Shown: one piece after another, positions 25,794-26,698 of the stretch | Position numbering within the stretch: the stretch's first letter is position 1 | Layout: each line of letters starts with the position of its first letter | Assembly (NCBI RefSeq): GCF_001194135.2 | Contig: NC_068988.1 | Coordinates: 9,778,860-9,842,859, forward strand | Length of the DNA: 64,000 nt | From: Octopus bimaculoides | Lineage: Eukaryota | Direction: 5' to 3' | Notes under the pieces: generated by a model | The model's database searches: none | What the model saw: only the letters and a program-made list of their open reading frames with translations | What the model was told of the DNA's origin: nothing | Position numbers and translations under genes: made by a program

Positions 25794-26698
25794 ATATCCT
25801 TTTAACCAGGCATGTGCCATCAGTAATTACTCAGGGTAGGCAGATGATGTTCTTTATGTAGTAAAACACACAAAAAATAAGTGAAACACAGCTGTGTGAC
25901 TGAGTTGAATGTAGAATTACTTCTGCCTTTATAACATGTAAAGAAAACATTGTTGTAGGAGTGTACGCAGCACGTGTACTACAGCAGTAATATGCATAGC
26001 TTAAATACTGAGACTGAAAAGCAGGGGTGAATTATGCCAACCTAATCTACAAAAAAGATAAAATATTTTGTATTTTATGCATAGTAATCAGAGTAACCTT
26101 CATAATTTTATTGAATTAGGATATTTTGCCATAAAAGGAAATTGTTACTATTGATCTATTTTATTCAAGGTAGGCACTTTCACATTCATATATTAATAGT
26201 TTAGACCTTAATTATGAAAAAAATATGAAACCCTTATTCTATGCTAATTTAGTTAATTTTGTCAAGCTCCCTTTTCAGTTTGTAAGATAGAAATTCAAAT
26301 GTAATAAAATGTTTTAAAAGAAATTTAAAGTGCCTACATTATTACTGTAAACCTACTTTTGTGTCCCCCTGTATAGACAATAGGCTTTTTTTAGTTTCTG
26401 TCTCACAAATCCATTCACAAAGCTTTGGTTGGCCCAGAGCTATAGTATAAGACACTTCCCCAATTTGCTGCAGGGTGAGACTGAACCCAAGATGGCATGG
26501 TTGGGAAGCAATCTTCTCAACCACACAACCATGCCTGCACAACATCATCATCATTATCATCCTCATCATCGTTCAATGCCCATCTTCCATGCTGGCATGA
26601 GATGGATAATTTTAAAATCTTTAAAAAATTAGCAGCGTTAAGAAATAAATGTCATATCTTGAGAAAAAAAAACTGTTTATTCCTTGACTGTTGTTTAC
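25794..26698 (+). other. U12-type (minor spliceosome) AT-AC intron, 905 nt
   Basis: 5' end ATATCCTTT; branch point TTCCTTGAC at 26680-26688; AC at 26697-26698; joining T+CG restores the frame ([16 protein letters not shown]). Confidence 0.93.

What the first reader, a model, noticed from the sequence alone, without database searches (positions are those of the whole stretch)
25794..26698. U12-type AT-AC minor-spliceosome intron in myosin VIIa MyTH4-2
No GT-AG pair gives a continuous frame matching human ...ACLAFIAVLKYMGDYPS. The exact U12 signals are all present: /ATATCCTTT donor, TTCCTTGAC branch point with the branch A 11 nt from the end, and AC/ acceptor. The join T+CG gives [15 protein letters not shown] (seen). 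Minor introns are rare and often rate-limiting (established), so this deafness/Usher-gene orthologue would depend on the minor spliceosome. GT-AG-only predictors would probably read through as FLYILL... and use the cryptic GT near 25837. I recall vertebrate MYO7A having a minor intron at this site but have not verified it; if so, the intron predates the protostome-deuterostome split.
Basis: partly seen in the sequence, partly recalled or inferred. Interest (0 to 1): 0.75.

Follow-up and report, generated by a model that had tools for sequence, protein, structure and literature searches.

The report
Conserved AT-AC minor intron, octopus myosin VIIa
The 905-base gap in the octopus myosin VIIa gene is a genuine minor-spliceosome (U12-type, AT-AC) intron, but it is the orthologue of the minor intron already catalogued in human and mouse MYO7A and the existing octopus gene model already uses it, so it is real and old but not new.

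Summary
Window 25794-26698 starts with ATATCCTTT and ends in AC. TTCCTTGAC sits so that the branch A is 11 nt from the 3' end. Each 9-mer occurs only once on the + strand of the 64 kb, at exactly these places. Joining 25793 to 26699 gives ...[18 protein letters not shown]..., which aligns without a gap to human myosin VIIa. None of the 56 in-frame GT/GC-AG alternatives does.

The window is Octopus bimaculoides. My 16-exon model is 100% identical to UniProt A0A0L8FWN7, so the annotation already uses this junction.

The same phase-1 AT-AC intron, at the same codon, is present in a primate, a carp, amphioxus, a spider, Lingula and an unnamed invertebrate contig. An abalone shows the 3' end only. 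The site is uninterrupted in a butterfly and a tardigrade.

The published catalogue of human and mouse minor introns lists one minor intron each for human and mouse MYO7A, with the matching 5' splice site.

It is a known kind of feature and largely already known.

One practical by-product: many GenBank gene models for this gene are broken at exactly this intron.

The parts
67..42428 (+). Part of the Octopus bimaculoides myosin VIIa gene held in the window, running from the last motor-domain exon to the stop codon (TAA at 42426-42428).
   Evidence: Pfam Myosin_head matches the ORF at 67-414. The 16-exon C-terminal model spanning 21717-42428 is 100% identical over 100% of its length to UniProt A0A0L8FWN7_OCTBM. 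The upstream exons were read from stop-free segments only and their junctions were not refined.
25633..25793 (+). Upstream exon (161 nt) encoding (R)PPPKRT...NQEACECFL plus the first base (T) of the Ser codon. The acceptor is ...TTTTTATCAG|G.
   Evidence: aligned to human MYO7A
25794..26698 (+). U12-type AT-AC intron, 905 nt, phase 1.
25794..25802 (+). U12-type 5' splice site, ATATCCTTT.
   Evidence: Only + strand occurrence in the 64 kb. The first nine intron bases (ATATCCTTT) are identical in L001, Lingula, Araneus and Branchiostoma.
26680..26688 (+). U12-type branch-point sequence TTCCTTGAC. The predicted branch A is at 26687, 11 nt from the 3' splice site.
   Evidence: Only + strand occurrence in the 64 kb. 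The same core is listed as the branch site of the human and mouse MYO7A minor intron.
26697..26698 (+). Terminal AC of the intron. There is no pyrimidine tract: the branch-site 9-mer (ending C at 26688) is followed by only TGTTGTTTAC, and the sequence upstream of it is A-rich.
26699..26790 (+). Downstream exon (92 nt): CG completes the Ser codon, followed by [30 protein letters not shown]. The donor is GTG|GTAAGT.
26177..26612 (.). Dispersed repeat copies filling the middle of the intron. They are not part of the splicing signals.
   Evidence: blastn of the intron against the window finds 18 further matching segments across 17 places at 71-88% identity.

Best explanation
Window 25794-26698 is a minor-spliceosome (U12-type) intron of the AT-AC subtype in the Octopus bimaculoides orthologue of myosin VIIa. 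It sits in phase 1, between ...EACECFL and ILKYMGD..., at the N-terminal edge of the second MyTH4 region.

By analogy with characterised U12-type introns (established knowledge, not tested here), the mechanism would run as follows. The U11/U12 di-snRNP recognises the two ends together. U11 pairs with ATATCCTTT. U12 pairs with TTCCTTGAC and bulges out A26687. ZRSR2 reads the 3' AC. U4atac/U6atac.U5 then carries out catalysis, joining 25793 to 26699.

The intron is the orthologue of the single minor intron catalogued in human and mouse MYO7A. It was already present, as AT-AC, in the last common ancestor of bilaterians. It has been kept in vertebrates, amphioxus, molluscs, a brachiopod and a spider, and lost in at least a butterfly and a tardigrade.
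For: Sequence signals and their uniqueness in the window.

The join aligns without a gap to human MYO7A. No GT/GC-AG alternative reproduces the conserved protein. All 14 other introns of the C-terminal half are GT-AG with pyrimidine tracts.

My model, which uses this junction, is 100% identical over 595 aa to UniProt A0A0L8FWN7 of O. bimaculoides.

The same AT-AC intron, at the same codon and in the same phase, with ATATCC... donors and (T/A)CCTT(A/G)A(C/T) branch sites 9-15 nt from the AC, is present in Saguinus oedipus, Cirrhinus mrigala, Branchiostoma belcheri, Araneus ventricosus, Lingula anatina and an unnamed invertebrate contig. Haliotis rubra shows the 3' end only.

Dozens of vertebrate genomic ORFs read ...AFI-DI(R/H/L), which is G|ATATCC.

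The supplement of PMC6717393 lists human MYO7A chr11:77203218-77204075 and mouse Myo7a as minor introns, with 5' splice sites TTG|ATATCCGTG and TAG|ATATCCACA and branch site CCTTCCTTGACA. PMC12589426 names Myo7a among transcripts with minor introns. [quoted passage not shown]

Loss of the intron is shown by uninterrupted genomic coding sequence in Pieris macdunnoughi and Paramacrobiotus metropolitanus. It is also shown by unnamed genomic ORFs that run through the site and then into a GTAAGT-type donor after ...PLKH.
Against: I could not examine any RNA from this species. Use of the junction in vivo rests on an existing annotated protein, whose evidence trail I could not see, and on conservation.

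Dependence on the minor spliceosome was not tested. No octopus U11, U12, U4atac or U6atac sequence was available.

That the catalogued human intron is this one rests on three things: the match of its 5' splice-site 12-mer (its first ten bases, TTGATATCCG, are shared with the tamarin) and its branch site, its similar size (858 vs 900 nt in the tamarin), and the listing of only one MYO7A minor intron. I did not read human coordinates directly.

The spider branch site (ACCTTAAT) is weaker than the consensus.
Confidence: 0.95

Rival explanations
1. The gap is removed by the major (U2-type) spliceosome, either as one of the rare U2-type AT-AC introns or through a nearby GT-AG pair such as the donor at 25836.
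For: A plausible cryptic donor AGG|GTAGGC exists at 25836, and in-frame AG acceptors exist at 26632 and 26635.
Against: Every GT/GC-AG combination inserts 12 or more unrelated residues or deletes LKYMGD. To my knowledge, U2-type AT-AC introns lack the ATATCCTT donor and the TCCTTRAY branch site close to the 3' end; both are present here and conserved across phyla. There is no pyrimidine tract. The annotated protein uses the AT-AC junction.
Confidence: 0.03
2. The interruption is not a functional intron. It could instead be an assembly artefact, a repeat insertion into an exon, or a decaying pseudogene copy.
For: The window is a draft assembly with several runs of N. About half of the interval consists of dispersed repeats.
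Against: There are no N bases inside 25794-26698. The boundaries carry exact splice signals at the same codon and phase as in seven other species. The whole C-terminal half gives an open 595-aa protein that is 66% identical to a bird MYO7A, with all Pfam domains intact.
Confidence: 0.01

Closest known systems
Human MYO7A / mouse Myo7a minor intron (Olthof et al. 2019, PMC6717393: human chr11:77203218-77204075, 858 nt; mouse chr7:98062729-98063587, 859 nt)
   Same: AT-AC subtype; 5' splice site ATATCC...; TTCCTTGAC branch-site core. It falls at the same codon (the residue before V/I-LKYMGD) and in the same phase 1. This was checked on primate and carp DNA and on the PDB 5mv9 alignment. Even the length is similar: 905 nt against 858-900 nt.
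   Different: The octopus donor is the full consensus ATATCCTTT, whereas the mammalian donors diverge after ATATCC (CGTG, ACA). The split codon is Ser (T|CG) instead of Ala (G|CN). The intron interior is unrelated, being made of octopus repeats.
Human MYO7B / mouse Myo7b minor intron (same catalogue)
   Same: It is also AT-AC, with 5' splice sites TCG|ATATCCTTC and TTG|ATATCCTTC and a TCCTT(G/C)AC branch site. It lies in the paralogue whose protein aligns across the same site (PDB 5mv8).
   Different: I did not verify on DNA that it sits at the same codon. It is much shorter (236-460 nt).
U12-type AT-AC introns as a class
   Same: All of the sequence-level defining features are present (see the membership test).
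   Different: Nothing in the sequence differs. Only the functional tests are missing.

Membership tests
U12-type (minor spliceosome) intron, AT-AC subtype | 5' splice site matching /(A|G)TATCCTT(T) | tested here: met
   ATATCCTTT at 25794-25802, a 9/9 match
U12-type (minor spliceosome) intron, AT-AC subtype | Branch-point sequence matching TCCTTRAY (TTCCTTRAC) | tested here: met
   TTCCTTGAC at 26680-26688; the same core is listed for the human and mouse MYO7A minor intron
U12-type (minor spliceosome) intron, AT-AC subtype | Short distance from the branch A to the 3' splice site (about 9-15 nt in the orthologues seen here; to my knowledge about 10-15 nt is usual for the class) | tested here: met
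   11 nt in the octopus; 9-15 nt in the seven orthologues
U12-type (minor spliceosome) intron, AT-AC subtype | AT and AC terminal dinucleotides, and no pyrimidine tract before the 3' splice site | tested here: met
   AT at 25794-25795 and AC at 26697-26698. The sequence upstream of the branch site is GAGAAAAAAAAACTG. All 14 neighbouring introns have long pyrimidine tracts and AG.
U12-type (minor spliceosome) intron, AT-AC subtype | The junction is used in mature mRNA | tested here: inconclusive
   The annotated protein A0A0L8FWN7 contains [12 protein letters not shown], and orthologous proteins are continuous across the site. I could not read any octopus RNA data.
U12-type (minor spliceosome) intron, AT-AC subtype | Splicing depends on the U11, U12, U4atac and U6atac snRNPs | not testable with these tools
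   This needs an experiment. No snRNA gene lies in the window (Rfam gave no match at gathering score).
Orthologue of the catalogued human MYO7A minor intron | Same position and phase in the aligned protein, and same intron type | tested here: met
   The link from the catalogue coordinates to this codon is made through the 5' splice-site 12-mer and the tamarin DNA, not by reading the human genome.
Myosin VIIa (class VII unconventional myosin) | Motor domain, IQ motifs, then MyTH4-FERM, SH3, MyTH4-FERM; closest relatives are MYO7A proteins | tested here: met
   Myosin_head at 67-414. P0131 carries FERM_C1_MyoVII, SH3_9, MyTH4, RA_2, FERM_M and IRS domains. The best PDB hit is the human MYO7A C-terminal MyTH4-FERM. 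The model is 66% identical to a bird MYO7A. IQ-like and first-MyTH4 exons were seen only by eye.

The most novel reading that the evidence does not exclude
Across seven sampled lineages spanning five phyla, this intron has stayed AT-AC, in the same phase, with a near-consensus donor. None of the sampled lineages has a GT-AG or U2-type intron at the site; wherever the AT-AC intron is missing, the coding sequence is simply continuous. The most novel reading not excluded is that this reflects selection for slow, minor-spliceosome-gated production of myosin VIIa in sensory cells (photoreceptors, mechanosensory hair cells). On that reading the octopus gene is regulated through retention of this one intron.
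Probability: 0.12. Interest if true: 0.45.

Novelty: already known. Interest (0 to 1): 0.25.

Why it matters
The finding itself changes little. Minor introns are known to be old and positionally conserved, MYO7A is a catalogued minor-intron gene, and the octopus gene model already has the junction.

Two modest points are of use. First, it gives a clean, DNA-level example of an AT-AC intron held at one codon since before the bilaterian radiation and lost in some ecdysozoans. Second, it explains a recurrent annotation error: in many deposited genomes the myosin VIIa gene is cut in two, or loses exons, exactly here. This affects orthology tables and gene counts. It can be fixed by allowing AT-AC junctions.

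Tried and rejected
Searches that found nothing:
- 'MYO7A' with 'minor intron' or 'U12-type' gave only passing mentions.
- 'Octopus bimaculoides' with 'U12-type' gave one unrelated plant paper.
- PMC7507305 and PMC11347168 hold no searchable supplements.
- PMC6865273 does not mention myosins.

Loci that could not be used:
- The termite (P0138) and starfish (P0247) genes are not on record.
- The Priapulus locus L008 has 3.4 kb of N and gave no match to either exon, so a basal ecdysozoan could not be scored.
- The upstream exon of Haliotis lies more than 10 kb away, outside the fetched flank.

Other checks:
- Other RTATCCTY matches on the + strand (2328 and 30691) are not exon ends: one lies deep in an intron and one inside a coding exon. 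This is therefore the only U12-type candidate in the part of the gene held here.
- Rfam found nothing in the window.
- ORFs inside the intron are read-through or repeat-derived.
- The RNA fold of the intron has a z-score of -3.6 on only 20 shuffles, and repeats are present, so I draw no conclusion from it.
- The retroelement-looking ORFs at 60474-61519 have no Pfam match.

Full report
What is there.

On the + strand the exon at 25633-25793 ends ...GAA TGT TTC TTA T. The next bases are ATATCCTTT (25794-25802). TTCCTTGAC lies at 26680-26688, AC at 26697-26698, and the next exon starts CG ATT CTA AAA TAT ATG GGA GAC at 26699. The branch A (26687) is 11 nt from the last intron base. Joining 25793 to 26699 gives PPPKRT...[39 protein letters not shown]. 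This aligns to human myosin VIIa (PDB 5mv9) at E 3e-26 with no gap at the junction ([14 protein letters not shown] over ACLAFIAVLKYMGD).

Is it more than chance?

ATATCCTTT and TTCCTTGAC each occur once on the + strand of the 64 kb, exactly at the two ends of the break in homology. The number expected on both strands together is 1.4 and 0.7. I enumerated every GT or GC donor and AG acceptor around the gap that keeps an open frame into ...FKIALKV. There are 56 such pairs, and none yields the 84-residue gapless product. They either add 12 or more unrelated residues or remove the invariant LKYMGD. I built the C-terminal half of the gene as 16 exons (21717-42428). The 14 other introns all have GT, AG and a long pyrimidine tract, while this one has none and is A-rich ahead of the branch site. 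A looser scan for RTATCCTY finds no other exon end in the gene.

Whose gene is it?

The 595-residue model is 100% identical over its whole length to UniProt A0A0L8FWN7, a 'MyTH4 domain-containing protein' of Octopus bimaculoides. That entry contains [15 protein letters not shown], so the existing annotation already uses the AT-AC junction. Its Pfam content is RA_2, FERM_C1_MyoVII, SH3, MyTH4, FERM_M and IRS. Together with the Myosin_head match at window 67-414, this makes it a class VII myosin. Its closest named relatives are vertebrate MYO7A proteins, at 66% identity. The junction Ser is residue 472, 21 residues before the Pfam MyTH4 match at 493-589.

Comparison with other animals, on DNA.

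Genomic ORFs from many vertebrates stop following the protein at ...EAC(L/M)AFI and continue as DI(R/H/L). That is the translation of G|ATATCC. I fetched loci and read the intron ends:

- Octopus: TAT|ATATCCTTTT ... TTCCTTGAC ... AC|CG (905 nt)
- Unnamed invertebrate contig, L001/L002: TAG|ATATCCTTTA ... TTCCTTGAC ... AC|CT (798 nt)
- Lingula anatina: TCT|ATATCCTTTC ... GTCCTTAAC ... AC|CT (3585 nt; the NCBI model uses the junction)
- Araneus ventricosus: ATG|ATATCCTTTA ... TACCTTAAT ... AC|CT (989 nt)
- Branchiostoma belcheri: TGT|ATATCCTTTC ... ATCCTTAAC ... AC|CC (546 nt)
- Cirrhinus mrigala: TTG|ATATCCTTCA ... TTCCTTGAC ... AC|CT (697 nt)
- Saguinus oedipus: TTG|ATATCCGCGC ... TTCCTTAAC ... 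AC|CC (900 nt)
- Haliotis rubra: TTCCTTAAC ... AC|CT (3' end only)

In every case the intron splits the codon before (I/V/L/M)-(L/M)-KYMGD after its first base. The branch A lies 9-15 nt from the AC.

In contrast, genomic DNA of the butterfly Pieris macdunnoughi and the tardigrade Paramacrobiotus metropolitanus codes straight through the site. So do many unnamed genomic ORFs, which then run into a GTAAGT-type donor after ...PLKH.

The intron is therefore shared by deuterostomes, lophotrochozoans and an ecdysozoan, and has been lost in some ecdysozoans.

What is already known.

The supplement of Olthof et al. 2019 (PMC6717393) lists one minor intron each for human MYO7A and mouse Myo7a. The human one is chr11:77203218-77204075, 858 nt, with 5' splice site TTG|ATATCCGTG and branch site CCTTCCTTGACA. 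The mouse one is 859 nt, with 5' splice site TAG|ATATCCACA. The first ten bases of the human 5' splice-site 12-mer (TTGATATCCG) are shared with the tamarin sequence I read at this codon, so this is the same intron.

MYO7B is also listed with an AT-AC donor. A 2025 paper names Myo7a among transcripts with minor introns (PMC12589426). Olthof et al. [quoted passage not shown]

I found no paper that discusses the octopus intron itself. Even so, the junction is in the public gene model and the general rule is published.

How it most likely works.

The sequence shows the recognition elements of the minor spliceosome. From established knowledge of U12-type introns, U11 pairs with the 5' splice site and U12 with the branch site as a di-snRNP. 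ZRSR2 reads the 3' end, and U4atac/U6atac.U5 carries out catalysis. None of this was tested for the octopus. It is an inference from the match to consensus and from orthology with an intron catalogued as minor in human and mouse. Whether splicing of this intron is slow or regulatory in the octopus is unknown.

The interior of the intron.

About half of the intron (26177-26612) is made of dispersed repeats that recur in many other places in the window. The ORFs there are read-through or repeat-derived. There is nothing to suggest a nested gene or RNA.

A practical by-product.

In several deposited genomes the gene is broken at exactly this intron:

- In the tamarin assembly it is called as three genes. 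One is a 115-aa 'hypothetical protein' that reads through the donor.
- In the carp there is a 57-aa fragment.
- In amphioxus and the spider there are two genes, of 1736+437 and 1741+434 residues.
- Models from Haliotis, Nucella, Batillaria and several fishes start at the Met of KYMGD.
- Models from Dreissena and Mactra start inside the intron's 3' end.
- The Bulinus model skips the exons altogether.

Verdict.

The feature is an ordinary, well-conserved member of a known class, and the orthologue of an intron already catalogued. Interest is low to moderate.

Noticed in passing
L003 (Saguinus oedipus GCA_031835075.1), L004 (Cirrhinus mrigala), L005 (Branchiostoma belcheri), L007 (Araneus ventricosus); proteins P0186, P0193, P0213, P0192, P0178, P0183, P0201, P0210, P0221-P0223, P0229: Deposited gene models of myosin VIIa are split, truncated to start at the Met of KYMGD, started inside the intron, or have the flanking exons skipped, all exactly at this AT-AC intron. 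It is a recurrent annotation error in both vertebrate and invertebrate genomes.
   Followed up: partly
L004 6631-6680 and 6834-6883: In the carp, the 3' end of the intron plus the start of the next exon (TTCCTTGAC...AC|..ATGAAATATATGGG) is present twice, 203 nt apart. Only the second copy continues into the full exon in tblastn. It could be a duplicated or alternative acceptor, or a pseudo-exon.
   Followed up: no
window 4621-5423, 10541-11015, 15159-15696, 37393-37888 and four 10-base runs: Runs of N (assembly gaps) lie inside the gene. This probably explains why the UniProt model is only 909 aa and starts in the first FERM region (about 16000), although motor, IQ and first MyTH4 exons are visible upstream.
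   Followed up: partly
window 26372-26540 and 26540-26612, with copies e.g. at 3067-3225, 12279-12446, 33859-34013, 35509-35665, 38669-38836, 41930-42076, 49026-49180, 59492-59564: Two short dispersed repeat families, at 71-88% identity, are scattered on both strands through the introns and the intergenic DNA. One copy of each sits inside the minor intron.
   Followed up: partly
window 60474-61519 (+): Long ORFs downstream of the gene look by eye like a retroelement remnant, but they gave no Pfam match at E<=0.001.
   Followed up: partly
PMC6717393 supplement (human chr2:127631364-127631599; mouse chr18:31966360-31966819): The paralogue MYO7B also carries an AT-AC minor intron with donor T(C/T)G|ATATCCTTC. 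It is probably at the same codon, which would fit an origin before the 7A/7B duplication.
   Followed up: no
L002 (JGI 3300000107, record name BSg4DRAFT_c10118647) and L001 (ENA ERZ27284689): An identical myosin VIIa fragment with the AT-AC intron turns up in two 'metagenome' assemblies, so it is host animal DNA. Its protein is closest to bivalve sequences such as Mactra ([12 protein letters not shown]...ANELTDQIFEPPLRT). The host was not identified.
   Followed up: no
window 35411-36299: This is the least canonical of the GT-AG introns, with donor TCC|GTATGTTAAA. It is not U12-like, having no TCCTT after GTA and a normal pyrimidine tract and AG.
   Followed up: yes
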